Below are positions 5,872-25,100 of a DNA stretch of 64,000 nt, piece after piece. Both the position numbers and the translations under genes were made by a program. The notes beneath the pieces were generated by a model. That model saw nothing but the letters and a program-made list of their open reading frames with translations. It ran no database searches and was not told the origin of the DNA. The stretch lies in IMG/VR virus record IMGVR_UViG_3300043446_005562, positions 62,001-126,000 of that record. One strand, written 5' to 3'. Position 1 is the stretch's first letter. Each line of letters opens with the position of its first letter.

Positions 5872-6117
5872 TTAGTTTAATCGATTTTCGTTCTTGTCAA
5901 GAGCCGGGTTTGCAAATATCTTGATCTGTTTCACAGCCTCAATGTGTTCATAAATATAGGTTTCAATGTAACCCATGAAACTGTCTAATACAGGGTTTGC
6001 ATCAAACATTTGATTAGACAGAGTTCTTTTTAATAGACTGCCCTTGTATTTAAAACCTAGGTGTAAGCGTCGGTCCTTTCGATTGTAGATTGTCCAATAG
6101 AGAGAATTTCTTATCAT
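5872..6117 (-). CDS. Small hypothetical protein, possibly baseplate-associated
   Basis: 81 aa; start overlaps the stop of the baseplate wedge gene. Confidence 0.55.
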   Translation of the reverse strand: MIRNSLYWTIYNRKDRRLHLGFKYKGSLLKRTLSNQMFDANPVLDSFMGYIETYIYEHIEAVKQIKIFANPALDKNENRLN

Positions 6118-7802
6118 GATAAAAGTCCTAATTTTTTACGAATTGACTTGTCCGGTTTTATTTCAATATTTAATGCGCTCAGCGTGCTATCTGAAATCCC
6201 AGCCTGATAGGCATTACCGCTACGATCTGTCCAACCTCCTCTAATTACTGGAAATTCAGACGGCTTAATAATAATATCGTTAAATTCATCCAGCCCAACC
6301 CGTTTGGTTTCGTCCCGATTTGGATTGTCCTTAAAGGCTTTTTCGTTCAGTTCTGACAGAATGGCCACGCTAACAGAATCGACTCCGTTTATCTCTTCAA
6401 TGATTTTAATTAAATCGCTCTTTGGCACACGGTCATTACGATTAAGTTTTATAAAGTAATTACCGACCGCGTCTGCAATATCCGATTTAATAATATCGGT
6501 TGCAACATCGTCAAATGCAACAACGCTGACGTTTAAAACATAGCGAGTAATTATGGGATCCAATAGATTAATCTCGGATGAAATCATCTTGGTACCAGAT
6601 TTTTCAATGTATTTTAAAAGTTCTTTCTTTTGAAACTCCGTCAATTTGAATTTGGTTAGAGATAGTTTAAAGTAGTCAGTGCCGGTTTTAAATAATTTAG
6701 AGACGTCCGGTACCAGAAATAGATTGATCATGCGAGAATCAAGTTCATCCAAAAATACTCTAACCGTTGAGAACATCTGCATTTTATGTAGCAGCACTTC
6801 ATAATTATCAACGTTAACGAGCGCAAAATTCTTTGAGGCTTTTGGCGCAATCAATCTGGTCAATTCAATCTCTTCCGGATCAACTCCAAAACTCGGTGGA
6901 CTTATTGTAAAAATATCAAAATACTCGTTCATATTGACCTCTTCGCCGATTGGAGAAAAGGCTGTTTCCGCGAATGTGAATTGAACTTGGCTTGCACTAT
7001 CGACCAAAACATTACCGCCAGCCCCTTCTGATACAAGATACTCGACGATTATTTCGGATCCAGCTGGTGGAATTTTACCAAATGAACCGTTTCCAAAATA
7101 AATGTCCAGACCGTTTGTTATGCCGGTTTTGGCAATAAAACCTTTACCACCGCGTGGAATGTCCAATAGCGAATCGTATTTTGTCCATTGTTCGCCATTA
7201 ACGTACACGTTAACTCGGAAATGATCAATGTAGTAGTTATATGGATGGCCTAACTGATAGCTCTCCAGCGGCTGACCCTTACCAGTAAATGTTTGGGATT
7301 CAATTTGACCCTGGCGCAAGTTAAAAATTGCAACAGTTTCATCGCCAGTTAAGTTTAGTCTAATCTCGTCCTGTGGTAATTCAATGACGTAGGTTAGGTT
7401 ATTATTGGAACAGGTTAATTTAAAAAGATCGTTAAGTAGAACCTTTGTTGCCGGTGGATTAATATTGGGTTTTCTAACTATTCTAATTTGAGAGGTTGCA
7501 CCGATTGCTCGACTTGGATTGTGACCTGCTAAACTTGCTAATGAATAGATTGAAGAAGGCCGAGTTGCCTCGTTAATGTTAAGTTCGGTGATTGAGTCCT
7601 CAATGTAATAAAAAATTAACTGACTTAAATTTTCAAAAACAATTAGTAATTGACCAAATGGCGAAGATGCCGTGAATATGGTCTTTGCCTGCTTGAATCT
7701 TTCCTGTAGAAATGTGATTGTCTCTCCAAGAATATCATTTATTCGGATTTTTAAGCTGGTAAAAAGCCTAAGGGAAGTATTTTGACTTGATAAATTGGCC
7801 AT
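6114..7802 (-). CDS. Baseplate wedge subunit (T4 gp6 / baseplate J-like)
   Basis: SIYSLASLAGHNP, IYFGNGSFGKIP, IVEYLVSEG.GGN and ALVNVDNYE motifs typical of gp6. Confidence 0.85.
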   Translation of the reverse strand: MANLSSQNTSLRLFTSLKIRINDILGETITFLQERFKQAKTIFTASSPFGQLLIVFENLSQLIFYYIEDSITELNINEATRPSSIYSLASLAGHNPSRAIGATSQIRIVRKPNINPPATKVLLNDLFKLTCSNNNLTYVIELPQDEIRLNLTGDETVAIFNLRQGQIESQTFTGKGQPLESYQLGHPYNYYIDHFRVNVYVNGEQWTKYDSLLDIPRGGKGFIAKTGITNGLDIYFGNGSFGKIPPAGSEIIVEYLVSEGAGGNVLVDSASQVQFTFAETAFSPIGEEVNMNEYFDIFTISPPSFGVDPEEIELTRLIAPKASKNFALVNVDNYEVLLHKMQMFSTVRVFLDELDSRMINLFLVPDVSKLFKTGTDYFKLSLTKFKLTEFQKKELLKYIEKSGTKMISSEINLLDPIITRYVLNVSVVAFDDVATDIIKSDIADAVGNYFIKLNRNDRVPKSDLIKIIEEINGVDSVSVAILSELNEKAFKDNPNRDETKRVGLDEFNDIIIKPSEFPVIRGGWTDRSGNAYQAGISDSTLSALNIEIKPDKSIRKKLGLLS

Positions 7803-8334: not shown

Positions 8335-9087
8335 ATGAAAGCTTTAAACACGGACGACATTTTTCTCAGAAATTTAACGATTGCTCTGCTTGATCTGCTA
8401 AACGGCTCAATGAATATTACCTTGTCTCGAGAAGATCACAAGGAGACTTTCACGGTTCCATTTCTCTACAATTTTGGAACGGACGAGGGTTTCTTAAAGG
8501 ATTTTTACATAGGCCTACCCGACAACTGTCAAATTCCAGTCGCGGAAGGTACTTACGATATTATTCCAAGGGGCATAGTTACGCTTAGCTCCTTTCAGGT
8601 AAAATCGTCAGATATTACAAATCGATTCGTTAGAGGTCAGTATGCCGAGCCTGAGAGGGGAGACAATGATCAGAACGTTCTCACAGGCTATTCGGCTCAA
8701 CTCTATTCTCTACCAATGTCGGTTAAATTTGATGTAAAAATCATTTGCGATAATTTAAACAAGGCTTTTAAAATCGCTGAGAGAATGCTAGACATTAACT
8801 ATGCAAATCGAGTGATGTATTTTCAATACAATGGTGTTAGAATCCCGGCGCAATTTCAGTTTCCAACCAATGAAACCATTGATAAAACTTACAAATTCAC
8901 GCTGGTTGAAAACAATAAACTAAATGTTAGCCTTTCAATCGACGTTGAGACCTACTTTCCGAGTTTTGAACAAAGCTCAAAAAGAAAGAGCACAAATGTT
9001 ATTGAGAGATTTAATTACACTAAAAAGGATGCGGGCGGCACAATTATGACATCGGGTTGGGTTGACCAAAATACAAAAGTTGACTAA
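8335..9087 (+). CDS. Tail sheath stabiliser / tail completion protein (T4 gp15-like)
   Basis: N-terminal F...LRNLTIALLDLLN, 'TVPFLYN', and later 'LPMSVKFDVKI' pattern resemble gp15. Confidence 0.7.
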   Translation: MKALNTDDIFLRNLTIALLDLLNGSMNITLSREDHKETFTVPFLYNFGTDEGFLKDFYIGLPDNCQIPVAEGTYDIIPRGIVTLSSFQVKSSDITNRFVRGQYAEPERGDNDQNVLTGYSAQLYSLPMSVKFDVKIICDNLNKAFKIAERMLDINYANRVMYFQYNGVRIPAQFQFPTNETIDKTYKFTLVENNKLNVSLSIDVETYFPSFEQSSKRKSTNVIERFNYTKKDAGGTIMTSGWVDQNTKVD

Positions 9088-9869
9088 TGAAGTATCTATT
9101 GGAATTTAAAACATTTTCTGTGCTCGAGGGCGGTAATGCTTTTCCAGAGGCACAGAGTCTTAAACGCGATCAGGTCGAATCGGCCTTTGCTAAATTTGAG
9201 GCAGCCATGACTCAAGTCTTTGGCGAAGCTGAGCTTGAATTAATTGGTTCATGGAAGCAGAAAGAGATTTCAGGCGATCTTGATACACTATTCTATTCTG
9301 ATTTGACGCTACCTGAAATTTCAGCAAAATTACAGTCACATGATTACGAAACCAAAATTTTCTATGGTTTCAATATTGTCTCAGTTAAATTTGAGATTGA
9401 GCCGGGTCTTTTTGTACAGTTTGACATGTTTGTTAGACCAATGGACACAAATCGAGACGTCAACGATCTCTTCTATAAGTCCCCAGCGGATGAGGAGTAT
9501 TCAACCAAGCACAGGGTGTTTTTGATATTTTGTGCACTTGACTCCATGAAATTTGACAAGATTGAAAAGGACGGGGCCTTGACGCAATTCAAAGGATACA
9601 TGCTCAGACCCGATGGACTCTATCAATTCACCAAGGAGATGAAAAAGGTAAATTACAAGATAACGGATCGTCAAAAACTAACGGACGATCTTGATCAAAT
9701 TTCCCTAATCCTATTTGGCAAGGTCTATCCTTACGAGCAATGGAACACCTTTGAAAAAACCCTGGCTCTACTCGAAAAGAATCCAAAATTGGACATGCGC
9801 CAAATCCTAGAAGAGTATCGTGCCAAGCTTGCAGAAGAGGGTTTAAGAGAGCCGGCCTCAATTAGTTAA
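9087..9869 (+). CDS. Pol-beta superfamily nucleotidyltransferase-like protein
   Basis: LIGS...SGDLD motif plus a third Asp in VQFDMF. Confidence 0.65.
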   Translation: MKYLLEFKTFSVLEGGNAFPEAQSLKRDQVESAFAKFEAAMTQVFGEAELELIGSWKQKEISGDLDTLFYSDLTLPEISAKLQSHDYETKIFYGFNIVSVKFEIEPGLFVQFDMFVRPMDTNRDVNDLFYKSPADEEYSTKHRVFLIFCALDSMKFDKIEKDGALTQFKGYMLRPDGLYQFTKEMKKVNYKITDRQKLTDDLDQISLILFGKVYPYEQWNTFEKTLALLEKNPKLDMRQILEEYRAKLAEEGLREPASIS

Positions 9870-10477
9870 AAATCCAATTCCAAATCAAAATTGAAGTACT
9901 TGAAATCGACAGTGAATGTCTGAAATTGTGGGGTGGTTGATGAATATGACAGCGTGATTGCGCTCATTGCGGTAATCATTGGTCGGTTAAAAATGATTGA
10001 GCTAACTCCGTAACCTTCATTGTTCAATAGGGTCAATCTGATTGGACTAAAGTAGGGATGATTTGCGTTTCTGATCTGATTATTGGTTAGTGCCTGACCC
10101 AGGGATTTTCCCGTGTTATTTTGATTAACGTTTGCGGGTTCAAGGTAATTGAGCACATTATCCATCATGATGAAGTAATTTAGGTAGGCATCAGTCAACT
10201 TAAAGGTCAGCTTAAGATCACGTGAAAACATGTCTGAAATTGGCTTTGCTGACTGCACTTCTTGAATTTTACCTAAGGTTCTGGTTTGGGTTGGCAATTG
10301 ACTTGTTAGTCCAGGAAAGGTCACACTTTGAATAGTCGATGCCATGAAATCCGAAATGGATCGATACGGCAACAGCAAATTACGATAGTACTGTTCATAC
10401 TTATCGTTCACCGTCTGGTTGAAAAAATCCTGCGGTAAATTGACTAAAAAACTGTTCTGTCTAGAATTAAGTATCAT
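9866..10477 (-). CDS. Tail tube-fold protein (T4 gp3/gp54-like tube terminator or initiator)
   Basis: IQSVTFPGL, LKLTFKL.D.YLNY and C-terminal FTVDFKYFNF pattern. Confidence 0.6.
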   Translation of the reverse strand: MILNSRQNSFLVNLPQDFFNQTVNDKYEQYYRNLLLPYRSISDFMASTIQSVTFPGLTSQLPTQTRTLGKIQEVQSAKPISDMFSRDLKLTFKLTDAYLNYFIMMDNVLNYLEPANVNQNNTGKSLGQALTNNQIRNANHPYFSPIRLTLLNNEGYGVSSIIFNRPMITAMSAITLSYSSTTPQFQTFTVDFKYFNFDLELDF

Positions 10478-10487
10478 ATAGAATTAT

Positions 10488-12815
10488 CTATACGAGGCCT
10501 AACACAGTCTTTAATTTATTGATGACTTCGGTTGCCTCAATTGATTTAGAACACTCAAACATTCGGTCTGTGCCCTTGTGTATGGGACACCAATTCCAAT
10601 CGCCTGGATCGAGTCGATGCGTGTTGAAACAGCCCGAGCACTTGTTGGAAGGTGCGCATATTCGGTGAGTGTTATGAAGAGTCTCAGTGTAGTCAAATGA
10701 AAAACCTGAAATTAGAATCAATGGAGTAGTCGTTGCCCAGGCAAGCCAGCTTAAACCGCTGCCTATTCCAACAAAGGCTTGCGACTCTTCCAATTCCCGA
10801 ATCACGGTTGAGAGCGGACCTGACTCAAGTTTTCTAATACCGGTTGGATGAGAATTGCCCATGAACCCGTCCTCCTCTCGAGAGAGTAATACCACTTCAT
10901 AGCCTCGCTCATTACACCAATCAACAACCTCTTGCCAGCCGGTTGGATTATTCCAATACTTTGCTTGGCAGGTGCCGTGAATTCCAATTGCGATTTTCTT
11001 CTTCTTTTCAACCTTTGGAATCTGAATGAGCGGTCTGGTCTCTTGATAGGCTAACCCTAAAATATCAAATGCGCATTTTTGCATAGGCTGGTCCTTGACC
11101 TCCCTGACATTTCGGGCCAGGTCAATTTCGTTCTGGTCATTGTAGTACCAGCCGATGTTGTACATCGCAACAATATTGTCCACCACCTCGCCCGGATTTA
11201 CAAATTCAATTTCCGGATACTGGTCCTTGAACATGTAATTCATGTGCGTTGAACAGACCACCTGGCAACCGTGCTTCTTTCTAAACTCTTCAACCGCTGG
11301 AAACCAGGCTAGGCTGTCTCCAAGCGAGCTTGAATCTAATGAAATGTAGACCCTGCGATCTTTGAGCACAATCGGCTCGTTAACAATCATTCTGCCGCTC
11401 TTGACGTCCGTGACTTGCACTCGCCAGTCGGTGTAAAACTTGCGGCTTGCCTTGACCCACATGTTTCTTTTGATTGTATCGCGATGAATGGTCCTACCTG
11501 AGGTTTGATCTATGAATTCAACTAGGTATTCGTCCTGAGGTCCCCCGGTTATCTCTACGTGAGGCCCGCCAACGAAATGATAGTTAATAACGAATTCTGC
11601 TTCGCGACTCTTGTTCACCTCTCTGATGTGATCTGACCGTTTAGCAATATGATTAGCGGCAAGCTCAGCAACCCTGTCCCAATTAAAATCCGAATGGATT
11701 TGAGCAGATTCCCTAACCGCCTTTTTTCGATATTCGGCTGAATTTTGATACACGTCCAGCATGACCCGGCCCAGGTCCTCAAAATCGGGCTCATAATAAT
11801 TGCCGCTTGCCCCATTGAAATGATTGTAGTCCGCGTCCCTTGCTGGTACCTGACCCAGTATTTTAACTGGATGACCCTTACCCTCAGCAAATTCAAGCTG
11901 ACCTGAGCAGTTTGAGTAGATTGCTGGCACTCCGCATGCCATTGCCTCGATTAGAGGTAGATTCCAACCCTCAGAGCGGGCACACGATAAAAAGGCACCA
12001 CATGATTTTAAAAGGTTAACATACTCTTTTCTGTCTGGAAAATGAATCACCTTGATACGGTCATCGTTGAGTCCAAAATGGGCTAGCCGTTTTTCGGTTG
12101 TCTCAAGGCCATCGCCTGAAAATGGATTATCGATTGAGACAATGAGGTCGACAGGCTCTTCTTTTTTGAATGTTTTTAAAAAGGTCTCAACAATCTCTTT
12201 GGTTGATTTTCGGTAATCCCAACGGCCGGCTAAAAAGAATTTAAAACGACCGTCCTGGGTCAATTCGTGTTTGGCTCCCGGGTCCGGATAGAACACTTGA
12301 GTGTCCACCCCCTCCGGAATAACAAAGATTTTTTCGGCTGGATAGCCTTGCGCAATGGTACAGTCGCGTTGCCATTTTGAAGGCACCCACATTTCATCAA
12401 ACTCCAGCAGTCGCTTAAAGAAATTTTCAGGCTGTTGAGTGGTCTCCCAAACGTTATAGGCTATTCGATAGTTCTGGTAATCGTGATAGAAGTAATGATG
12501 ATCGGTTTCATTTAGCACCAGGTCAATCTCGGCCTCACCCGGATTGGGCCAGGCCTCGTACATTTTAAACTCCATTAATCTCTGGTCCGGCGTCCACAGG
12601 GATTGCTCATGCAGCAAGGTCTTCATCCGGTCCGTTAGATAGGGTTCCTGATTGTGGGGCTCTTCTGACATGCCCTGCCAGGTTTTACCCACCGTAAAAT
12701 TTCTGATCTCAAGAGGCACTCTTTCGGAGAGCTTTGTAAAAAAGGATTGTGCGTGATTGTTGTAACCGGTCGAGCCTATGAATGAGGTATGAACCTTGAT
12801 TTTTGGAAGAGTCAC
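10488..12815 (-). CDS. Bifunctional glycosyltransferase: GT4 domain plus TibC/Aah-like autotransporter O-heptosyltransferase domain
   Basis: GT4: EGWNLPLIE (EX7E), GRWDYRK. C-terminal part: SSSLGDSLAWF, FVGIGSGLSWLAW and a four-Cys CSGC...WCP...FECSK motif like the Fe site of TibC. GTG start. Confidence 0.88.
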   Translation of the reverse strand: MTLPKIKVHTSFIGSTGYNNHAQSFFTKLSERVPLEIRNFTVGKTWQGMSEEPHNQEPYLTDRMKTLLHEQSLWTPDQRLMEFKMYEAWPNPGEAEIDLVLNETDHHYFYHDYQNYRIAYNVWETTQQPENFFKRLLEFDEMWVPSKWQRDCTIAQGYPAEKIFVIPEGVDTQVFYPDPGAKHELTQDGRFKFFLAGRWDYRKSTKEIVETFLKTFKKEEPVDLIVSIDNPFSGDGLETTEKRLAHFGLNDDRIKVIHFPDRKEYVNLLKSCGAFLSCARSEGWNLPLIEAMACGVPAIYSNCSGQLEFAEGKGHPVKILGQVPARDADYNHFNGASGNYYEPDFEDLGRVMLDVYQNSAEYRKKAVRESAQIHSDFNWDRVAELAANHIAKRSDHIREVNKSREAEFVINYHFVGGPHVEITGGPQDEYLVEFIDQTSGRTIHRDTIKRNMWVKASRKFYTDWRVQVTDVKSGRMIVNEPIVLKDRRVYISLDSSSLGDSLAWFPAVEEFRKKHGCQVVCSTHMNYMFKDQYPEIEFVNPGEVVDNIVAMYNIGWYYNDQNEIDLARNVREVKDQPMQKCAFDILGLAYQETRPLIQIPKVEKKKKIAIGIHGTCQAKYWNNPTGWQEVVDWCNERGYEVVLLSREEDGFMGNSHPTGIRKLESGPLSTVIRELEESQAFVGIGSGLSWLAWATTTPLILISGFSFDYTETLHNTHRICAPSNKCSGCFNTHRLDPGDWNWCPIHKGTDRMFECSKSIEATEVINKLKTVLGLV

Positions 12816-12843
12816 AGAAAAAGGAGTTTATAGACTTATACTC

Positions 12844-12851
12844 CAAACCTA
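12844..12851 (-). promoter_or_regulatory. Possible Bacteroidota sigma-A -7 element (TAGGTTTG)
   Basis: Matches TAnnTTTG 28 nt upstream of the glycosyltransferase start; no clear -33 TTTG. Confidence 0.35.
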
Positions 12852-12895
12852 ATTTTGAGTTTTAGCCATAACCCTGAAAATTAGGGCAGCTCTTT

Positions 12896-13657
12896 TTAAG
12901 TACTGATTATGAAGGCTGGGCATCTATAAAAATCAACACCGGCTTGGCCCTCCCAGACGTTATTTGGAGAGTTCTTTGCTGCATCAAGAAACTGGGCCTG
13001 ATGAGCTAATGATTCACCGGTATGATGATCGAGTATGTCTAAATTAACGTTGTAACCGTTGTTAAGATCCTGATTTACAATGGACCAGTAATATCTGACT
13101 CCGCCGTTTGCTCCACTGGTCGATTGGCTTGTACCATTACCACCGGCTGCAATATTGCCGTAAAAATCTACTCCGCCACCGGCTGGCCACATTTGAGATG
13201 GTGGCGGCGCAAACGTTATGCCAGGGATTTGAAAAATCCACTCACTCCAAAGACGTATGTTAACATCAATATTGGTGTTTGGATCATTGGTTACAACTTC
13301 AAGGCGCCCTCGATTGTCAAAGGGCCAGTGATCATATCCTTTAAAATCTCCCCATCGTATTTTGCCATTGCTCCACGCATAATTATAGATATTTTCGCCA
13401 GATGTGCTATTGCGATTAATATAATAAGAAGTTCCTGAATATGTTCCAGCCGTAATGTAGCCGTTCATTGAGCTATGGGGAGCAGGATTCGAAGAATCTA
13501 GATCAAATTGTGCAATATCGCCTGCCGCAAGACTGGCTGTTCCGTTTTGAGTGAATGCTCTGATCAAACTATTGGTCGAGGTTGTGCCGACTGATGTGCC
13601 GTTCCATCCAACTCTCACGCTGGAGCCGCTCTGCATTACGTATGGACTTGTTGCCAT
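12896..13657 (-). CDS. Probable fibre-associated virion protein
   Basis: 253 aa, G/N/S-rich beta-type composition; start overlaps the stop of the giant fibre gene. Confidence 0.6.
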   Translation of the reverse strand: MATSPYVMQSGSSVRVGWNGTSVGTTSTNSLIRAFTQNGTASLAAGDIAQFDLDSSNPAPHSSMNGYITAGTYSGTSYYINRNSTSGENIYNYAWSNGKIRWGDFKGYDHWPFDNRGRLEVVTNDPNTNIDVNIRLWSEWIFQIPGITFAPPPSQMWPAGGGVDFYGNIAAGGNGTSQSTSGANGGVRYYWSIVNQDLNNGYNVNLDILDHHTGESLAHQAQFLDAAKNSPNNVWEGQAGVDFYRCPAFIIST

Positions 13658-16600
13658 TAACTTAGTTTATTTTTTAAGTCCTCAATCTGGGCCTGCTGTT
13701 CCTTGATTGCCTCAATCAGGACCGAAACCAGATTTGCATAGGAAACTGCTTTGGTACCGTCCGGATTGGTGAAGACCACCTGCGGGAATGCCGCTTCCAT
13801 CTCCTGCGCAATGACTCCAGCGTAAACTCTAGTCTGGTCTTCTTGATCGTTACGTGTGAAGGTTACACCGCGCATTGCCTTTACCTTAGCCAGGGCGTCT
13901 GTGATGGTTTCAACATTATCCTTAACCGATCGATCTGAAAAGGCTATAATATTACCGGCTGCATAGATATCTCCAGTACCACCGCCGACCGTACCAACTT
14001 CAAGCGTATAACCTGGAGTTGCACCAGCATTCACGCTTAATCTCGCATTGGTTTGATCCCAATAGAGTTGATTCGTATCATCAACTGCTGCACCCGTTGC
14101 TGGGTAATAAGCAACATAGCCTGCATTACCGGAGTTTACCGTACCCGAACCTCCACCGCCGGAAATCGTAACGTCCGCCTGGCTACCCGAAGCGGCAACG
14201 GTTGCGCCCGACACAAAGTTAATAGAGGTAGCGCTTGAAACAATGGTGGTTCCAGCTTGTTTAACCGAGACAGCTGATGCGGTTCCAGAAGTTCCGCTTG
14301 AGCCAGAAGTTCCTGAAGAACCCGCTGCTCCTGTTGCGCCGCTTGTTCCTGATGATCCAGAAGTTCCTGACGAACCTGCGGGACCAGTCGCTCCAGTAGC
14401 ACCGCTTGTTCCTGAAGAACCTGAAGTTCCTGAAGAACCTGAAGTTCCTGACGAACCTGCTGCACCGGTTGCTCCGCTTGTACCTGAAGAACCTGAAGTT
14501 CCTGAAGAACCAGCTGCACCGGTTGCTCCGCTTGTGCCAGAAGAACCTGAAGTTCCGTCTTTTCCATTAAATACCCATGATACTGTGTAGTAAGAGGTTG
14601 TGTTCACTATACCAGTTCCAGCGAGTAGGGTATTTAATTGTATGTCGTAGTATGTTGTCTGATTTGTGAAAGTTCCAACTTTCCATGCTCCAATTGCTGC
14701 GTTGTTGCCAACCTCTGTTATTTGAAGATAAGAGACATTTCCTGCTGCGAGCATTGTGCCCAATGTATTAAACCAAGTTGCGTATGCTGTGCCAAATGTG
14801 TCCTGTCTTGAAATACTTAATTTAGTAGCTGTCCCAAGGTTAGTTGTGTCTAATTTGAATTGACCGAGACCTGGTGAAGAATATGCAAGCGCACTATTAT
14901 CAAACCTCCATCGACCTGAGTTTGAACCGTCATTACCTGCTGCTCCAGCCGCTCCGGTTGCTCCGCTTGTTCCACTAGAACCTGAAGTTCCCGAAGAGCC
15001 TGAAGTTCCAGAAGAACCTGCTGCTCCAGTAGCACCGCTTGTTCCGCTACTTCCACTTGTTCCAGAAGAACCGGCTGCACCGGTTGCTCCACTTGTGCCA
15101 GAAGAACCCGAAGTTCCACTAGAGCCTGATGATCCGGAAGTTCCTGAAGAACCTGCCGCACCGGTTGCTCCGCTTGTTCCTGAAGAACCGGACGTACCTG
15201 ACGAACCAGCAGGACCTGTTGCTCCGGTTGCTCCACTTGTACCAGAAGAACCAGATGTTCCGCTTGATCCAGAAGAACCAGAAGTTCCGCTAGAGCCTGA
15301 TGATCCAGAAGTTCCTGAAGAACCTGCTGCACCAGTTGCGCCGCTTGTTCCAGAACTGCCTGATGTGCCAGAAGATCCTGAACTACCTGATGTGCCTGAG
15401 CTTCCAGAAGAACCTGATGTTCCACTACTTCCACTTGTTCCAGATGAACCTGCAGGACCAGTCGCTCCAGTAGCACCACTAGTTCCTGAAGAACCTGAGC
15501 TACCTGACGTACCTGAACTACCGGACGTTCCCGAAGAACCGGCTGCTCCAGTCGCTCCACTCGTACCTGAAGAACCCGAAGTTCCTGAGCTACCGGCAGC
15601 ACCAGTTGCTCCGCTAGTTCCTGATGAACCAGATGTTCCGCTTGAACCAGACGAGCCGCTAGTTCCCGATGAACCTGAAGAGCCTGATGTTCCACTAGAG
15701 CCTGATGTACCGCTTGCTCCACTTATACCGCTAGTTCCGCTTGAACCGGATGAACCGCTTGTTCCTGAAGAACCGGCAGCACCCGTTGCTCCACTCGTAC
15801 CTGAAGAACCTGAAGTTCCTGAGCTGCCGCTTGAACCTGAAGTTCCCGAAGAACCTGAACTGCCGCTTGTTCCGCTAGAACCGCTAGTTCCCGAAGAACC
15901 TGCTGCACCAGTTGCACCGCTTGTTCCAGAAGAACCAGATGTTCCCGAAGAACCCGCTGCTCCGGTTGCTCCACTAGTTCCTGATGAACCGCTAGTTCCT
16001 GAAGATCCTGAAGAGCCGCTAGTTCCTGATGAACCGCTTGAGCCAGATGTTCCCGAGCTTCCGCTAGTTCCTGAAGAACCTGAGGAACCGCTAGTTCCGC
16101 TTGAACCTGAAGTTCCAGATGAGCCAGATGTTCCTGAGCTACCGCTTGTTCCACTTGAACCACTTGTTCCTGAAGAACCGGCTGTACCGTTTTTACCATT
16201 AAACCACCAGCTAATTACATGTTCATTACCGTTAGTTAAAGTTCCAGTGCCGGCATTCAAGTTTAAATCAACTTGTACAACGTTTCCAACTGGAGAACCA
16301 ACTGCTGTGATTGCATAAACTCCTCCAATTCCAGTAGTTAATTCAAAAATTTCTAAGTATGCTTGATTACCTGCAGTTACTTGAGTTTGAATAGCCGACC
16401 ACCATTGAGTTGAATTGAATGAACTTGGTCTGTATGCCGTTATATTTACATAAAATTTGTTAATTAAACCGACGTTCGTTGTAGCAGTTACACCCGCATA
16501 ATAGTTAATGTTTGTAGAACCTGGTGTAGTTGAAGCGCTTGAATTGAATATCCATGAAACGCCGTTTCCTATTGAACTTGCACCCGAAGTACCTGAGCTG

Positions 16601-19600
16601 CCGCTTGTTCCACTAGAACCTGAAGTACCTGAGCTACCTGAAGATCCGGATGTTCCAGATGATCCCGATGTACCTGATGAACCTGACGATCCACTTGTAC
16701 CGCTGCTTCCACTTGAACCTGATGTTCCACTTGAACCTGAACTGCCTGAAGTACCCGATGAACCGCTAGTACCGCTAGAACCGGAAGTTCCAGATGAACC
16801 TGAAGAACCTGATGTACCGCTTGATCCAGACGAGCCAGATGTTCCTGACGAACCGCTAGTACCAGAGGAACCTGAAGAACCACTAGTTCCGGATGAACCG
16901 CTTGAACCGCTTGTTCCAGACGAGCCAGAACTTCCTGAAGTACCACTTGAACCCGAGCTTCCAGATGTACCAGAAGAGCCAGATGTTCCAGAGCTACCTG
17001 AAGTTCCGCTAGATCCAGATGAACCTGAAGTACCTGAAGAACCTGAGCTACCAGAAGTTCCACTTGATCCTGATGTACCAGAAGAACCTGATGTTCCTGA
17101 GCTTCCACTAGTTCCTGATGAACCTGAAGAGCCAGATGTTCCCGAAGAACCACTACTACCACTTGTTCCACTTGAACCCGATGTTCCGCTACTACCCGAT
17201 GAGCCGCTAGTTCCTGAAGAACCGCTGCTTCCTGATGTCCCACTTGAACCACTTGTTCCAGAAGAACCCGAAGATCCTGATGTGCCAGATGAGCCTGAAG
17301 AACCTGAAGTTCCTGAGCTTCCGCTTGTTCCTGAGCTACCCGAACTACCAGAAGTTCCACTTGAACCTGAAGTACCTGAAGATCCAGAAGTTCCAGAAGA
17401 ACCGCTTGAGCCTGATGTTCCTGAGCTACCAGATGTTCCCGAAGAACCAGAAGTACCTGAAGATCCAGAAGTACCTGAGCTGCCTGAAGAACCTGAAGTT
17501 CCAGATGAACCGGACGAACCAGAGGTTCCAGAGCTTCCTGAAGTTCCTGAACTACCTGATGTTCCAGAGCTACCGGATGTACCGGAAGAGCCTGAGCTTC
17601 CGCTTGTTCCGCTTGAACCTGAACTTCCGCTAGTTCCGGATGAACCGCTTGAGCCTGAAGTACCACTACTACCTGATGAACCTGAAGAACCACTTGTTCC
17701 GCTTGAACCTGAAGAACCGCTAGTACCTGAACTTCCCGAAGTACCTGATGAGCCAGACGTTCCTGAAGAACCTGAAGAACCAGAAGTTCCGCTTGAGCCT
17801 GAGCTTCCTGATGTACCGCTACTTCCACTTGTACCACTTGAGCCAGAAGTTCCTGACGAACCGCTTGAACCAGAGGTACCGCTACTACCTGATGAACCTG
17901 ACGTTCCTGAAGAACCAGAAGAACCCGATGTTCCTGAGCTACCGCTTGTACCACTTGAACCTGATGTTCCACTGCTGCCTGATGAACCGCTAGTACCAGA
18001 AGAACCTGAAGTACCAGAAGATCCACTTGAACCAGAGGTACCAGAACTTCCTGAAGAGCCGGATGTTCCAGAGCTTCCGCTTGTACCAGATGAACCTGAA
18101 CTTCCAGAGGTTCCAGATGAACCACTAGAACCTGAAGTTCCAGAGCTTCCTGATGTACCCGATGAGCCTGAGGTTCCAGCGCTTCCGCTAGTACCAGATG
18201 AACCGCTTGATCCGGACGTACCATTTACTCCAGAAAGACCAGATGTTCCACTTGAGCCTGATGTACCTGAACTTCCTGAAGAGCCAGATGTTCCAGAGCT
18301 TCCGCTTGTACCTGAACTTCCAGATGTTCCAGATGAACCGCTTGAGCCCGAAGTCCCTGAGCTACCAGATGTTCCGCTTGAGCCTGACGAGCCGGATGTT
18401 CCGGAAGAACCTGAGCTGCCAGACGTGCCTGAAGATCCAGAAGTACCTGAGCTTCCACTTGTTCCGGATGAACCTGAAGAGCCGCTTGTTCCGGATGAAC
18501 CTGAACTACCGCTTGTTCCACTTGAACCGCTTGAACCTGATGTTCCTGAAGAACCTGAGGTGCCAGAACTTCCTGAAGTACCAGAAGAACCTGAACTACC
18601 GCTTGTTCCACTAGAACCGCTTGAACCTGATGTTCCTGAAGAACCGCTCGTTCCTGAAGAACCAGAAGAACCTGATGTTCCTGAAGAACCTGATGTACCA
18701 GATGACCCTGATGTTCCACTTGAGCCTGATGAGCCACTTGTTCCTGAACTACCCGAACTTCCACTTGTACCTGAAGAACCACTAGTTCCTGATGAACCTG
18801 AACTTCCAGATGTTCCTGACGAACCAGAAGAACCTGATGTTCCGGAACTACCACTAGTTCCTGATGAACCACTAGTTCCAGAAGAACCCGAAGATCCGCT
18901 TGTTCCGGATGAACCGCTTGAGCCGCTAGTTCCAGAGCTACCTGATGTTCCAGATGAACCTGACGTACCTGAACTACCACTAGTTCCAGAAGAACCGCTT
19001 GAACCTGATGTTCCTGAAGAACCTGAACTACCTGAAGTTCCTGAAGAACCGCTAGTTCCTGATGAACCTGAAGAGCCAGATGTTCCTGAGCTACCACTTG
19101 TTCCACTTGAACCAGATGTACCTGAACTACCTGAAGTTCCTGAAGAACCGCTGCTTCCCGATGTCCCACTTGAACCACTTGTTCCAGAAGAACCCGAGGA
19201 TCCTGATGTGCCAGATGAGCCTGAAGAACCTGAAGTTCCTGAGCTTCCACTAGTTCCGCTTGAACCTGATGTACCACTAGAGCCTGAACTGCCTGAAGTA
19301 CCTGAACTACCACTTGAGCCAGAAGTTCCTGACGAACCGCTTGAGCCTGAAGTACCACTACTACCTGATGAACCGCTAGTACCAGAGGAACCTGACGTTC
19401 CTGAAGAACCGCTTGTTCCTGATGAACCGGATGAGCCAGAAGTTCCACTTGAACCGGACGAACCAGAGGTTCCAGAGCTTCCTGAAGTTCCGCTTGAGCC
19501 AGAGCTACCGCTTGTTCCTGATGAACCTGAGCTACCGGATGTACCGGAAGAGCCTGAACTTCCGCTTGTTCCTGATGAACCCGACGTTCCTGAAGAACCA

Positions 19601-22089: not shown

Positions 22090-22121
22090 TTATCTGCAAT
22101 TGTTTTTTATTATCTATATTT

Positions 22122-25100
22122 TTATCGTGGTCGATTAGTTCCGACCAAGAAATTTGCCCAACCGCTCAATGATGGAGGTAGGGCATTCCAGCTACCTGCT
22201 GGAAAAGGAGTTTGTCCACTAGATACAACGGTTCCACCAATCCAATAGTCATCGGTATGTGTCACATTATCGTTGAATAAAGTGTATGAAGAGACTTCTT
22301 CTGTGTGGAAATAAACGTCATCCAACAGAATACCTTTACTTGTACCTTGAGGATCTGTGTATATGAAATTTGGAGAACCTCCAGTTAGTCCAAGCGAAGC
22401 AAATGTCGTTTGGTGAATACTTAATCTGGATTCAACAGTATATGAAGAATTTAGATCTAAAAGCATCCAACTTTCGCTAGAAGCAGTTGCTGTTCCTGGG
22501 GTAAGTACGCTGTTTGGACGGCGGTTATACATTTCAAAATGGCAACCTCTAATGTATGCAGTAGACTGATCTAGCGATACAAGATAGCAGTACACATTAT
22601 TGTTTGCGCCAGTATCAACAATCTCACAATTTTCCAAATACAGAGATGAATATCTTGCTAAAATTGCATAGGCCCCGTTTGATGAATGGTCTACCTGTAT
22701 TTTGATATTATTCATCTTTAGTGAGCCGTTTGCTACAAATATAGCGTTCATAGTCGGCACTGATATTACGCTGTTATAACGACCCGATCCAGTTATTGTC
22801 AACTCAGCAGCAGTCAACCAAGTATTACCAGCAGAGCCTGATACAGCTAATGTTACGCCTGGCTCAAAGTAGAGAGATACATTGTATGAACTCGATACAG
22901 TTACCGTAGTCGATTCAGTATAGGCTCCTCTAAATACATGAATTGTATAGCTACCTGCTCCAAGAGCAGAAAGGCCATTTAAAGCGCCGTTGATTGTTTG
23001 CCAAGGTAAATCTAATCTACCTAATTGTGCAGTAGTATTATTTCCATTCGGATCAACAAATAAAGTTTGAGCATATCCTATTGCTTGGAAAGAGGTTCCA
23101 CTTGTTCCGCTTGATCCTGAAGTTCCACTTGAGCCAGAAGAACCCGATGTGCCTGACGAACCAGAAGTTCCAGAAGATCCGCTTGAACCTGACGTTCCAG
23201 AGCTTCCACTGGTTCCTGACGAACCACTAGTTCCGCTTGAGCCACTAGAACCAGATGTTCCTGAAGATCCTGAAGTACCTGACGAACCAGACGAGCCAGA
23301 TGTTCCGGCTGAACCTGACGTACCAGATGAACCTGAACTACCTGATGTTCCGGAAGAGCCTGAGCTTCCACTAGTTCCACTAGAACCAGATGTACCACTT
23401 GAACCTGATGAACCTGAAGTTCCTGAGCTACCTGATGTTCCAGATGAGCCACTGGAACCGCTTGTGCCCGAAGAACCTGAAGTTCCACTAGATCCCGAAG
23501 ATCCAGATGTTCCCGAAGAACCACTTGATCCAGATGTTCCGGACGATCCACTAGTTCCTGATGAACCTGAACTACCTGATGTTCCCGAAGAACCGCTAGA
23601 GCCTGACGTACCTGAGCTTCCACTAGTTCCTGATGAACCTGAAGTTCCTGAGCTACCTGATGTTCCAGATGAGCCACTTGAACCTGAAGTGCCACTAGAT
23701 CCTGAAGATCCTGAAGTTCCGCTTGAGCCACTAGTTCCACTAGAACCAGATGTTCCTGAAGAACCGCTAGATCCTGACGTACCGGAGCTTCCACTAGTAC
23801 CTGAAGAACCGCTACTACCGGATGTTCCCGAAGAGCCCGAAGTTCCGCTACTTCCTGAAGATCCTGAGGTACCAGACGATCCTGAACTACCTGATGTTCC
23901 GCTTGAACCGCTTGTTCCTGAAGAACCTGAACTACCTGATGTTCCCGAAGAACCTGAAGTACCACTTGACCCTGATGTACCTGATGAACCTGAGCTTCCG
24001 CTAGTACCAGATGAACCACTTGAGCCTGAAGTTCCTGAGCTTCCGCTAGTTCCTGATGAACCTGATGTACCGCTTGAGCCAGATGTACCGCTTGAACCTG
24101 AAGAACCACTTGTTCCGCTTGAACCTGAAGAACCACTTGTTCCGCTTGAACCTGAAGAACCTGATGTACCTGATGAACCTGAGCTTCCTGAAGTTCCGCT
24201 TGAACCGCTTGTTCCTGAAGAACCCGAGCTTCCACTAGTTCCGGATGATCCACTTGAACCCGACGTTCCCGACGAACCGCTTGTTCCACTTGAACCAGAA
24301 CTTCCGCTTGTTCCAGAAGAGCCTGAGCTTCCTGAAGTACCACTTGAGCCAGATGTTCCACTAGAACCACTACTACCTGAAGTACCAGATGATCCCGATG
24401 TACCGGAAGATCCACTTGTTCCACTAGATCCACTTGAGCCTGATGTACCAGATGATCCTGAAGTACCAGATGAACCGCTTGTTCCGGATGAACCTGAGCT
24501 TCCTGAAGTACCGCTTGAACCTGATGTTCCTGAGCTTCCGCTAGTACCTGATGAACCTGACGAACCGCTTGTTCCGCTTGAACCGCTTGAACCTGATGTC
24601 CCAGAAGATCCACTAGTTCCTGACGAACCCGATGTACCTGAACTTCCTGATGAACCTGATGTACCAGAGCTGCCTGATGTTCCAGATGATCCCGAAGATC
24701 CTGAAGTACCAGATGAACCGCTGCTTCCTGATGTGCCCGAAGAACCAGAGGTTCCACTTGAACCTGATGTACCTGAGCTACCACTAGAACCGCTAGTACC
24801 GGATGAGCCGCTAGAACCCGAAGTTCCTGATGAACCTGAACTTCCACTAGTTCCGCTAGATCCACTTGAGCCGGAAGTTCCTGATGAACCTGACGTACCC
24901 GATGATCCGGAAGTTCCACTTGAACCGCTGCTACCTGATGAACCTGATGTTCCGCTAGAACCTGATGTTCCTGATGAACCTGAACTGCCGCTTGTTCCTG
25001 AAGAACCGCTTGAACCTGAGGTTCCTGAAGAGCCTGAACTTCCAGAAGTACCGGATGAACCGGCTGTTCCGCTAGATCCTGATGTTCCAGATGAACCACT

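What the first reader, a model, noticed from the sequence alone, without database searches (positions are those of the whole stretch)
10488..12815. GT4 fused to a complete TibC/Aah-like heptosyltransferase, including the four-Cys metal site
Seen: the N-terminal ~400 aa are GT4. From about 11600 there is a TibC-like N-terminal beta segment (YHFVGG...WVKASRKFYTDWRVQV), an SLGD motif and C-x2-C...C...C. Known: TibC is an iron-containing dodecameric enzyme. Inference: a two-step enzyme (priming plus extension) or one with two acceptors. The donor may not be ADP-heptose, because no heptose pathway genes are seen in this window.
Basis: partly seen in the sequence, partly recalled or inferred. Interest (0 to 1): 0.7.

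Follow-up and report, generated by a model that had tools for sequence, protein, structure and literature searches.

The report
Phage GT4–TibC-like enzyme beside collagen-like fibres
A 252-kb freshwater phage encodes one protein that joins an ordinary sugar-adding enzyme to a copy of the iron-binding enzyme E. coli uses to sugar-coat its adhesins. It lies next to two giant, proline-free, serine/threonine-rich collagen-like fibre genes that are its most likely targets, which has not been tested.

Summary
ORF 10488-12815 (minus strand, 775 aa) is one intact gene.

- **N-terminal half (aa 1-403):** a GT4 glycosyltransferase with the E-x7-E motif.
- **C-terminal half (aa 404-775):** a full TibC fold (Z 42, rmsd 1.9 Å), with the beta-barrel, the catalytic Asp and the four iron-site Cys.
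- **Departures from E. coli TibC:** the adenine-contacting Arg286 is replaced by Val here and by V/T/L/I in all 80 phage members. The thumb is shorter and not predicted as a hairpin. The genome has no autotransporter. ADP-heptose use and a dodecamer therefore cannot be assumed.

The window belongs to a 252-kb freshwater jumbo phage, and the gene sits in its tail/fibre module. Directly upstream on the same strand are two giant collagen-like genes (2810 and 2514 aa), made of 746 and 554 Gly-Ser/Thr-Ser triplets. They hold the only large collagen tracts in the genome.

The pairing recurs:
- 27 of 80 related phage loci, against 0 of 80 control loci.
- The cultured Microcystis phage Mel-JY01.
- 28 of 54 closer genome-collection loci, mostly stand-alone bacterial genes beside small secreted (GTS)n proteins.
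- 0 of 24 classical loci.

Best reading: a two-domain O-glycosyltransferase that decorates the fibres. This is an untested inference, and I call it a new variant of a known kind.

The parts
10488..12815 (-). Whole gene: 775-aa GT4 + TibC-like fusion glycosyltransferase. GTG start; no signal peptide evident at the N-terminus (by eye, no predictor run).
11607..12815 (-). GT4 (GT-B, retaining-type) domain, aa 1-403. The E282-x7-E290 motif lies at nt 11946-11972.
   Evidence: Pfam PF00534/PF13692/PF20706. phrog_2170. Z 35 to chlorovirus NY2A GT 3oy2 and Z 28-32 to MshA, BshA, PimA and GlgM. Motif conservation.
11337..11606 (-). N-terminal beta-barrel of the TibC-like domain (aa 404-493; contains YHFVGG...WVKASRKFYTDWRVQV).
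   Evidence: Eight predicted strands between aa 410 and 493. Superposes on the TibC chain from residue 21. TibC barrel = residues 1-97 (PMC4358343).
10488..11336 (-). TibC-like catalytic domain (aa 494-775). Residue map: D500 (nt 11316-11318) = TibC Asp110; T615/K619 = Thr226/Lys230; W690 = Trp305; V671 replaces Arg286; G685 replaces Pro300.
10551..10640 (-). Four-Cys metal site: C726, C729, C743, C755 (= TibC iron-finger Cys339/342/358/370).
   Evidence: Pairwise alignment and the paper. Conserved in 44 of 50 fusion relatives, where six relatives lack all four Cys, and in 79 of 80 phage members plus all 53 members of the three bacterial clades tabulated.
13657..22089 (-). Fibre A, 2810 aa. 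746 Gly-X-Y triplets in three blocks (X = Ser/Thr, Y = Ser in 94%), two globular inserts, and a C-terminal Peptidase_S74 intramolecular-chaperone domain. Proposed acceptor.
   Evidence: Pfam Collagen 2.5e-293 and PF13884 1.3e-12. Sequence. Counts.
22122..29666 (-). Fibre B, 2514 aa. 554 Gly-Ser/Thr-Ser triplets in three blocks, with globular N-terminal, internal and C-terminal domains. Proposed acceptor.
   Evidence: Pfam Collagen 9.2e-219. Sequence. Counts.
12896..13657 (-). 253-aa ORF of unknown function between fibre A and the glycosyltransferase. Its start region overlaps the fibre A stop by one base.
   Evidence: No Pfam, NCBIfam or PHROG hit. Atlas gives only viral hypothetical proteins, score 0.81.
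9866..10477 (-). 203-aa tail-tube-like / tail-completion protein directly downstream. A ~204-aa ORF sits in the same position in two relatives.
   Evidence: Atlas score 0.97, Phage_TTP_2 / T4 gp19-like. Synteny.
8335..9087 (+). T4 gp15-like tail sheath stabiliser. Marks the tail module.
   Evidence: Pfam PF16724 8.8e-06. Same neighbour in relatives.
6114..7802 (-). Baseplate wedge protein. Marks the tail module.
   Evidence: phrog_219 8.2e-33; TIGR02243, weak.

Best explanation
This is a phage-encoded, probably cytoplasmic, two-domain protein O-glycosyltransferase belonging to the virion fibre module.

Shown:
- One intact polypeptide joins a GT4 domain to a full TibC-fold domain.
- The TibC-fold domain keeps the catalytic Asp, the beta-phosphate Thr/Lys, the sugar-contacting Trp and the four-Cys metal site.
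- It lies 0.85 kb downstream, on the same strand, of the genome's only two large collagen-like genes. Those genes are almost pure Gly-Ser/Thr-Ser triplets.
- The pairing of a TibC-like enzyme with a G-S/T-S repeat protein recurs in related phages and in bacteria.

Inferred:
- The TibC-like domain puts the first sugar on Ser/Thr hydroxyls of the fibre repeats, as TibC does on Ser of TibA.
- The GT4 domain adds a second sugar.
- Relatives with an inserted FkbM methyltransferase methylate the glycan.
- The dense glycan coat stabilises and/or shields a proline-free, charge-free collagen-like fibre that would be roughly 0.5 µm long.

The donor of the TibC-like domain is uncertain. The Arg that reads adenine in TibC is lost throughout this clade, so a nucleotide sugar other than ADP-heptose is possible.
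For: Architecture and fold.

Catalytic and metal residues are conserved: D500 50/50, T615 50/50, K619 46/50, W690 50/50, Cys4 44/50, E-x7-E 47-49/50.

Context:
- The genome is a 252,618-bp virus record. The gene sits among baseplate, gp15-like, tail-tube-like and terminase genes, with the same synteny in two relatives.
- The only GXY tracts of 30 or more triplets in the whole genome are at window 14278-29039.
- 27 of 80 related phage loci (17 of 38 that are at least 15 kb long) hold at least 30 GXY triplets within 10 kb. The figure is 0 of 80 for portal loci of the same clade.
- The cultured phage Mel-JY01 has a GTS/GSS collagen-like ORF of at least 1016 aa, 1.7 kb upstream of its GT4-FkbM-TibC gene.

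Cellular-genome collection:
- 28 of 54 loci with at least 34.4% identity have a (G-[STA]-[STAG]) run of 8 or more triplets within 3 kb, mostly within 1.3 kb. Most are stand-alone bacterial TibC-like genes; a few are the fusion-bearing, probably phage-derived contigs. The 12 bacterial loci inspected carry these tracts in signal-peptide or lipoprotein-type proteins.
- The figure is 0 of 24 for the classical Burkholderia/Oxalobacter-type loci.
- Two classical loci checked sit next to an autotransporter; two methanotroph loci checked do not.
- In the tree, the window's domain falls in a well-supported clade with both phage and methanotroph/Polaromonas members.

Fibre properties:
- Fibre A ends in a Peptidase_S74 trimerisation chaperone.
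- The collagenous parts have almost no Pro or charged residues, so they lack the usual stabilisers.
Against: - There is no direct evidence of glycosylation, enzyme activity, donor or acceptor. Everything about the acceptor rests on gene neighbourhood.
- About half of the well-flanked phage loci have no collagen-like or S/T-rich tract within 10 kb, so the link is not universal.
- The enrichment partly reflects the gene simply lying in the tail-fibre module. The portal control samples the head module.
- G-S/T-S tracts in the small bacterial proteins may be disordered linkers rather than collagen helices.
- The order of action of the two domains is a guess.
- Oligomer modelling gave no answer.
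- RNA-library contigs do not prove transcription.
Confidence: 0.55

Rival explanations
1. The enzyme glycosylates other virion proteins (capsid, tail tube, sheath, or the globular domains of the fibres) rather than the collagen-like repeats. This would resemble mycobacteriophage virion glycosylation.
For: It sits among tail genes. About half of the well-flanked relatives have no collagen-like neighbour. The GT4 domain's PHROG family (phrog_2170) is filled by Streptomyces and Rhodococcus phage glycosyltransferases.
Against: In bacteria, stand-alone TibC-like genes of this clade have G-S/T-S repeat proteins as their recurrent neighbour. In this genome the adjacency to the only collagen-like genes is exact.
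Confidence: 0.17
2. It is an auxiliary gene that remodels host surface glycans (LPS core, capsule or S-layer) during infection, for superinfection exclusion or release. The GT9-like half would act as a lipid-linked heptosyltransferase.
For: There are weak hits to GT9 and WaaC models (29.6 and 27 bits). Phages often carry GT4 genes as 'moron/AMG' genes (PHROG category). Elsewhere the genome has an HldE-domain-I-like kinase, shared with cyanomyoviruses.
Against: The TibC score is ten times the WaaC score. The protein-specific extras of TibC (beta-barrel, metal finger) are present. The gene sits in the structural module, not in a sugar-gene island. The repeat-protein neighbour is conserved.
Confidence: 0.12
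3. The TibC-like half is mainly a non-catalytic, metal-dependent scaffold or chaperone that grips the fibre during assembly, and only the GT4 half is an active enzyme.
For: In TibC the iron finger binds the substrate and builds the oligomer (PMC4358343). The adenine-contact Arg is lost.
Against: The catalytic Asp, the beta-phosphate Thr/Lys and the sugar-contact Trp are invariant or nearly so across the family. That is not expected for a dead enzyme.
Confidence: 0.06
4. It glycosylates phage DNA (hypermodified bases) to evade restriction.
For: Virus-encoded glycosyltransferases are known to do this (background cited in PMC12619734).
Against: The fold and motifs are those of a protein O-glycosyltransferase. 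The gene lies in the late structural module. I did not search for base-hypermodification genes, so none is known nearby.
Confidence: 0.02

Closest known systems
TibC / AAH bacterial autotransporter heptosyltransferases (BAHT family; E. coli; PDB 4RAP, 4RB4; NCBIfam TIGR04414)
   Same: The whole fold matches (Z 42, rmsd 1.9 Å, 32% identity), including the N-terminal beta-barrel. Also shared are the catalytic Asp110, Thr226/Lys230, Trp305 and all four iron-ligand Cys. Probably cytoplasmic, and the inferred chemistry is O-glycosylation of Ser in a long repetitive rod-like protein.
   Different: It is fused behind a GT4 domain and encoded by a phage. Arg286 (adenine contact) is Val. Pro300 is Gly. 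The thumb is shorter and not predicted as a hairpin. The genome has no autotransporter and no AIDA-type target repeat. The neighbour is a Gly-Ser/Thr-Ser collagen-like protein. Donor, metal and oligomeric state are untested.
Stand-alone TibC-like genes of methanotrophs, Polaromonas and Burkholderiales (e.g. Methylobacter luteus L177, Methylomicrobium lacus L190)
   Same: These are the closest cellular relatives of the C-domain (43-48% identity, same well-supported clade). They show the same replacement of Arg286 by a hydrophobic residue. Their recurrent neighbour also carries (GTS)n/(GSS)n tracts.
   Different: They have no GT4 domain and no GT4 gene nearby. Their partners are small secreted proteins or lipoproteins with 10-50 triplets, not giant fibres. 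As far as I could find they are uncharacterised.
Chlorovirus-encoded capsid glycosylation enzymes (structural match: PBCV NY2A glycosyltransferase, PDB 3OY2; multi-domain A064R-type enzymes, from my own knowledge)
   Same: A virus encodes its own cytoplasmic glycosyltransferases for a structural protein. The N-domain's best structural match is the chlorovirus enzyme (Z 35). Relatives with GT + methyltransferase + GT layouts recall multi-domain viral glycan builders.
   Different: Sequence identity is only 14%. The host domain, the acceptor and the second enzyme type all differ.
O-glycosylated collagen-like proteins: Bacillus anthracis BclA (GPT repeats) and Riftia cuticle collagen (galactosyl-Thr). 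From my own knowledge; not tested here.
   Same: These are collagen-like Gly-X-Thr repeats where O-linked sugars on Thr take the place of hydroxyproline as stabiliser or surface coat.
   Different: Their repeats contain proline and their enzymes are unrelated to TibC. Here the repeats are Pro-free G-S/T-S, and glycosylation is only inferred.
Mycobacteriophage virion glycosylation (Freeman et al. 2023, as cited in PMC12619734)
   Same: Phage-encoded glycosyltransferases decorate virion proteins.
   Different: There the glycans sit on the C-termini of the capsid and tail-tube subunits. No TibC-like domain or collagen-like acceptor is reported. I could not read that paper here.

Membership tests
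BAHT / TibC-AAH family | Sequence membership: scores above the curated cut-off of TIGR04414 over the full model | tested here: met
   260.5 bits against a cut-off of 200, model positions 6-374 of 374. 263 bits in the genome search.
BAHT / TibC-AAH family | TibC protomer fold: N-terminal flattened beta-barrel plus a GT-B catalytic domain with a reduced N-lobe | tested here: met
   Foldseek: the top 21 hits are all TibC chains, TM 0.85-0.88. VIA-align: Z 42, rmsd 1.9 Å, model 407-775 against TibC 21-390.
BAHT / TibC-AAH family | Catalytic base Asp110 and the donor contacts Thr226, Lys230 and Trp305 | tested here: met
   D500, T615, K619 and W690 align to them. They are invariant or nearly so in 50 relatives and across clades.
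BAHT / TibC-AAH family | Arg286 contacting adenine N1 (the basis of ADP-sugar specificity); R286A impairs TibC | tested here: not met
   V671 sits at that position in an ungapped alignment, 19 residues before the invariant Trp. The position is R in 23/23 classical and 8/8 Arenicellales-like members, but V/I/M/T/L in 22/22 methanotroph-clade and 80/80 phage members.
BAHT / TibC-AAH family | Four-Cys 1Fe-0S 'iron finger' | tested here: met
   C726, C729, C743 and C755 align to Cys339/342/358/370. The ligand set is present. Which metal it binds is not testable here.
BAHT / TibC-AAH family | Beta-hairpin thumb with a hydrophobic tip (Phe265-Val266) and dodecameric ring assembly | tested here: inconclusive
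   F651-M652 align to the tip, but the segment is 3 residues shorter. It has no strands in a confident model region, pLDDT 90-94. The column is poorly conserved and poorly aligned across clades. The homodimer prediction returned 'no answer'.
BAHT / TibC-AAH family | Acceptor is an AIDA/TibA-type autotransporter with 19-residue strand-loop-strand repeats, usually encoded next door | tested here: not met
   The 252-kb genome has no PF03797 beta-domain and no TIGR04415 target repeat. Two classical-clade loci checked do have an adjacent autotransporter.
BAHT / TibC-AAH family | Uses ADP-heptose as donor | not testable with these tools
   The phage has an HldE-domain-I-like kinase (112 bits, below the cut-off of 345) and a generic nucleotidyltransferase. 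It has no GmhA, GmhB or HldE domain II. The host is unknown.
GT4 (retaining GT-B glycosyltransferases) | Pfam Glycos_transf_1 above the gathering score, the E-x7-E motif and the GT-B fold | tested here: met
   PF00534 52.6 bits against a cut-off of 26.4. E282/E290 conserved. Z 28-35 to MshA, BshA, PimA, GlgM and 3oy2 over model residues 1-400.
LPS heptosyltransferases WaaC/WaaF (GT9) | Scores as WaaC/WaaF and lacks the TibC extras | tested here: not met
   TIGR02193 27 bits against a cut-off of 185. PF01075 29.6 bits on aa 588-731 only. No WaaC or WaaF chain among the top 50 structural matches.
Collagen-like phage fibre (for the neighbours) | Long uninterrupted Gly-X-Y arrays plus a trimerisation or chaperone domain | tested here: met
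   Pfam Collagen 2.5e-293 and 9.2e-219. Peptidase_S74 at the C-terminus of fibre A. 746 and 554 triplets. Actual triple-helix formation is not testable here.

The most novel reading that the evidence does not exclude
A large branch of the TibC/BAHT family, found in many aquatic phages and in bacteria such as methanotrophs and Polaromonas, is a previously unrecognised protein O-glycosylation system. On this reading:
- its dedicated acceptors are Gly-Ser/Thr-Ser repeat proteins;
- it has switched away from adenine-specific donor recognition;
- in jumbo phages it is fused to a second glycosyltransferase (and sometimes a methyltransferase) to build a short glycan on thousands of Ser/Thr residues;
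- that glycan takes over the stabilising role of hydroxyproline in proline-free collagen-like fibres about half a micrometre long.
Probability: 0.35. Interest if true: 0.8.

Novelty: new variant of a known kind. Interest (0 to 1): 0.62.

Why it matters
BAHT enzymes are known only as partners of AIDA/TibA-type adhesins in proteobacterial pathogens.

If this branch really glycosylates Gly-Ser/Thr-Ser repeats, three things follow:
- The family has a second, much more widespread acceptor class.
- It explains how proline-free, charge-free 'collagens' of over 2,000 residues could fold and survive.
- It shows that many aquatic phages coat their fibres with self-made glycans. That bears on host recognition, resistance to proteases and grazers, and particle stickiness.

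It also flags a systematic annotation error: collagen-like genes are called on the wrong strand. And it offers a cultured test system, Microcystis phage Mel-JY01.

Tried and rejected
- **WaaC/WaaF-type LPS heptosyltransferase:** rejected. 27 against 260 bits, and no structural match in the top 50.
- **Assembly chimera:** rejected. There are hundreds of independent full-length homologues, and an independent contig has no indels in the ORF.
- **Complete phage-encoded ADP-heptose pathway:** not found. SIS_2/GmhA, GmhB-type phosphatase and HldE domain II searches were empty. Only an HldE-domain-I-like PfkB kinase and a generic nucleotidyltransferase lie about 130 kb from the gene. The 354-aa ORF between them stayed unknown.
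- **Homodimer prediction of the C-domain:** 'no answer', so it is not used as evidence.
- **Promoter and terminator scan of 9500-14000:** no more sites than in shuffled sequence.
- **253-aa ORF:** no family or informative atlas hit.
- **GT4 homologue next to the bacterial stand-alone genes:** none found.
- **Literature searches:** TibC or heptosyltransferase combined with phage or collagen-like terms found nothing relevant, and Mel-JY01 has no paper in the library. The Freeman 2023 paper is not held.
- **Thumb-tip conservation across clades:** the region aligns too poorly to use.
- **Pfam and PHROG scans of the other large ORFs (29908-60500):** only weak neck, tail-fibre or unknown-function hits.
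Full report
**1. What is in the sequence**

ORF 10488-12815 lies on the minus strand and encodes 775 aa from a GTG start.

N-terminal half:
- Pfam finds GT4-type domains on aa ~110-384: PF00534 at 5e-14, plus PF13692, PF20706 and PF13439.
- PHROGs assigns aa 16-393 to phrog_2170, 'glycosyltransferase', at 5e-35.

C-terminal half:
- NCBIfam places aa 404-771 in TIGR04414 (hepto_Aah_TibC) over the whole model at 260.5 bits, cut-off 200. WaaC (TIGR02193) reaches only 27 bits.
- Against PDB sequences the best match is TibC (4rap/4rb4) at 7.7e-57, aligned from aa 426 to 768.

The domain boundary is at nt 11606.

**2. Structure**

An AlphaFold2 model built on 50 homologues has mean pLDDT 92.5. Its pTM of 0.60 means two well-defined domains with an uncertain mutual orientation.
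- Foldseek's first 21 PDB hits are all TibC chains: TM 0.85-0.88 by target, about 380 columns.
- VIA-align gives Z 42 and rmsd 1.9 Å for model 407-775 against TibC 21-390. The beta-barrel, both lobes and the Cys-rich insertion are therefore all covered.
- For model 4-395 it gives Z 35 to a chlorovirus NY2A glycosyltransferase (3oy2), then Z 28-32 to retaining GT4 enzymes.
- No WaaC or WaaF chain appears among the top 50 hits.

**3. Residue-level comparison with TibC**

The functional residues come from the TibC structure paper (PMC4358343). I mapped them through the pairwise alignment and counted them in 50 fusion relatives and in 153 C-domains from phages and bacteria.

| TibC residue | Role | Here | Conservation |
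|---|---|---|---|
| Asp110 | catalytic base | D500 | invariant |
| Thr226 / Lys230 | beta-phosphate | T615 / K619 | 50/50 and 46/50 |
| Trp305 | heptose O4 | W690 | invariant |
| Cys339/342/358/370 | iron ligands | C726/729/743/755 | 44/50; the other six relatives lack all four |
| Arg286 | contacts adenine N1 | V671 | see below |
| Pro300 | D,D-heptose selectivity | G685 | G 40, S 10 of 50 |

- GT4 motif: E282-x7-E290 is conserved.
- Arg286: this position sits 19 residues before the invariant Trp, in an ungapped alignment. It is Arg in 23/23 classical (Burkholderia/Oxalobacter-type) and 8/8 Arenicellales-type sequences. It is hydrophobic or Thr in 22/22 methanotroph/Polaromonas-type and 80/80 phage sequences. 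The R286A mutation impairs TibC.
- Thumb: the thumb that builds the TibC dodecamer keeps an F-M pair at the aligned tip. It is 3 residues shorter and has no strands in a confident part of the model.
- A homodimer prediction gave 'no answer'.

The enzyme core and the metal site are therefore TibC-like. ADP specificity and the dodecamer cannot be assumed.

**4. Where it is**

The window is bases 62001-126000 of a 252,618-bp virus record, estimated 93% complete.

Genes around the ORF:
- a baseplate wedge protein
- a T4 gp15-like sheath stabiliser
- a tail-tube-like protein
- a large terminase
- further on, a neck protein

The genome also has a T4-type portal, outside the window. The portal's nearest relatives are huge uncultured phages and Lak phages. 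A recent paper describes aquatic jumbo phages of that neighbourhood, with predicted Bacteroidota hosts and several core glycosyltransferases. It says nothing about TibC-like enzymes or collagen (PMC12619734). I did not establish the host.

The sequence occurs in freshwater, reservoir, lake, estuary and river metagenomes. An independent reservoir contig covers 9800-13558 with 43 substitutions and a single 1-bp indel, which lies outside the ORF. Riverine RNA libraries hold short identical contigs, one of them spanning the domain junction. That is compatible with transcription but does not prove it.

**5. The neighbours**

Immediately upstream on the same strand lie a 253-aa ORF of unknown function and two giant genes, of 2810 and 2514 aa.
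- Both are collagen-like: Pfam Collagen 2.5e-293 and 9.2e-219. The first ends in a Peptidase_S74 intramolecular chaperone, a domain typical of trimeric phage fibres.
- They contain 746 and 554 Gly-X-Y triplets, with X = Ser or Thr and Y = Ser in 94% or more.
- They hold 1,542 and 1,255 Ser+Thr and almost no Pro or charged residues. As triple helices they would measure about 640 and 475 nm.
- These are the only GXY tracts of 30 or more triplets in the whole genome.

The long ORFs on the opposite strand (for example 16508-21787) are shadows of the repeats.

**6. Is the pairing more than local chance?**

- **How common the fusion is.** At least 120 clusters at 90% identity are full-length relatives of the fusion, or carry extra inserted domains. 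At least 596 IMG/VR contigs encode a relative. The TibC-like domain occurs in 1,437 clusters at 50% identity, and most of the closest are multidomain.
- **Phage loci.** Of 80 related phage loci, 27 hold at least 30 GXY triplets within 10 kb (17 of the 38 loci that are at least 15 kb long). Many contigs end inside the repeats. Among 80 loci fetched around the portal gene of the same phage clade, none does. Two flavours occur, G-S/T-S and Pro-rich GPI/GPQ/GPT.
- **Close relative and cultured phage.** A close relative (L008) again has a G-S/T-S ORF of at least 1,914 aa upstream. The public gene call there is on the wrong strand. The cultured Microcystis phage Mel-JY01 has a G-T-S/G-S-S ORF of at least 1,016 aa, 1.7 kb upstream of its 1,226-aa GT4-FkbM-TibC gene. 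That ORF is likewise annotated as minus-strand hypothetical proteins.
- **Cellular genomes.**
  - Full-length fusions appear only on MAG contigs of incoherent taxonomy, which are probably phage.
  - Stand-alone TibC-like genes at 43-48% identity occur in cultured methanotrophs, in Polaromonas and in others.
  - Among loci with at least 34.4% identity to the C-domain, 28 of 54 have a run of 8 or more G-[STA]-[STAG] triplets within 3 kb, mostly within 1.3 kb. Most of these loci carry stand-alone bacterial genes; a few are the fusion-bearing contigs.
  - In the 12 bacterial loci inspected, the tracts lie in small proteins with signal peptides or lipoboxes.
  - Among the 24 more distant, classical loci, none has such a run.
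  - Two classical loci checked have an autotransporter next door. Two methanotroph loci checked do not.
- **Tree.** In a FastTree phylogeny the classical loci form a well-supported clade without such neighbours. The window's domain lies in a well-supported clade that mixes phage and methanotroph/Polaromonas sequences.

Caveats:
- The portal control samples the head module, so part of the enrichment may only reflect location in the fibre module.
- About half of the well-flanked phage loci have no collagen-like or S/T-rich neighbour.

**7. Mechanism proposed**

Shown: two intact glycosyltransferase domains in one probably cytoplasmic protein, placed in the fibre module next to extremely Ser/Thr-rich collagen-like proteins, with a neighbourhood that is conserved across phages and bacteria.

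Inferred:
- The TibC-like domain attaches the first sugar to Ser/Thr of the repeats, by analogy with TibC on TibA.
- The GT4 domain extends it.
- Relatives with an inserted FkbM methyltransferase (985-1,330 aa) would methylate the glycan.

The glycan probably stabilises or shields a fibre that lacks proline and charge pairs. From my own knowledge, O-glycosylated Thr plays such a role in Riftia collagen and decorates BclA. This was not tested here.

Donor:
- The phage lacks GmhA, GmhB and HldE domain II.
- It has an HldE-domain-I-like kinase and a nucleotidyltransferase far from the gene, both shared with cyanomyoviruses that have no TibC-like gene.
- With the loss of Arg286, a non-ADP donor is possible but unproven.

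**8. Comparison and verdict**

- It works like a BAHT enzyme and has the BAHT fold, catalytic residues and metal ligands.
- It fails two family-defining features that I could test: the adenine-contact Arg and an autotransporter acceptor.
- One feature is inconclusive: the thumb and dodecamer.

I therefore file it as a new variant of a known kind. It is a phage GT4-BAHT fusion belonging to a BAHT branch whose conserved partner is a G-S/T-S repeat protein. I found no paper describing this. Public pipelines simply label such proteins 'autotransporter strand-loop-strand O-heptosyltransferase'.

Confidence:
- Architecture: very high.
- Fibres as the acceptor: about 0.55-0.6.
- Order of action of the two domains: lower.

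Noticed in passing
window 16508-21787 (+), 23149-25725 (+); L008:1-5100; PP395634 (L001) 1-651 and 739-2298: The collagen-like repeats throw long shadow ORFs on the opposite strand, giving (x-x-Pro)n 'proteins'. Public gene calls for a related contig and for Microcystis phage Mel-JY01 chose the shadow strand, so their collagen-like fibre genes are unannotated.
   Followed up: yes
G000:C1 ~200.5-203.8 kb (L006:8493-9914, 9920-10984, 11013-11777, all minus): A PfkB kinase whose best model is HldE domain I (heptose-7-phosphate kinase): 112 bits, below the cut-off. Beside it are a 354-aa unknown ORF and a 473-aa nucleotidyltransferase. Kinase homologues sit next to nucleotidyltransferases in cyanomyoviruses P-SSM2, S-SM2 and S-CAM1. 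This may be a partial nucleotide-sugar pathway. It has no GmhA or GmhB.
   Followed up: partly
relatives P0026-P0047, P0093; L001:4750-8430: Many relatives carry an FkbM-type (or other) methyltransferase inserted between the GT4 and TibC-like domains (985-1,330 aa). Others place the TibC-like domain in proteins of up to about 2,000 aa.
   Followed up: partly
alignment A1, columns of C726/C729/C743/C755: Six of 50 fusion relatives lack all four metal-site Cys (replaced by T/P, Y, Y, E/S/K) while keeping the catalytic Asp. The metal finger therefore seems dispensable in some lineages.
   Followed up: no
window 43413-43502, within ORF 41232-43604 (-): A third, short collagen-like run of the proline type (GEPGPAGATG...) in a protein with weak tail-fibre PHROG hits. 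It differs from the G-S/T-S fibres.
   Followed up: no
window 10496 -> 10927: Contigs from two riverine RNA libraries (X16, X17) join these positions and skip 430 nt inside the TibC-like domain. Only 25-38 nt lie on the shorter side, so this is probably a chimeric or foreign contig. It remains unexplained.
   Followed up: no
L006:11790-13763 (-); L007:5476-8430 (-): The phage encodes a ClpB-like double AAA+ chaperone (657 aa) and a 984-aa protein with an RNA-ligase domain.
   Followed up: no
L176 (254,203-bp contig in a 'Bacteroidetes' MAG); L169, L171, L172, L175: Full-length fusions in the genome collection sit on contigs binned to Pacearchaeota, Woesearchaeota, Thermoplasmatales, Patescibacteria and Bacteroidetes MAGs. 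These are most likely mis-binned phage contigs. The 254-kb one is the size of this phage and may hint at a Bacteroidota host.
   Followed up: partly
L216, L220, L221 (Arenicellales / Gammaproteobacteria MAGs): These bacterial loci carry two or three separate small lipoprotein genes flanking the TibC-like gene. Each has (GSS)n/(GTS)n tracts and an acidic D-rich tail.
   Followed up: partly
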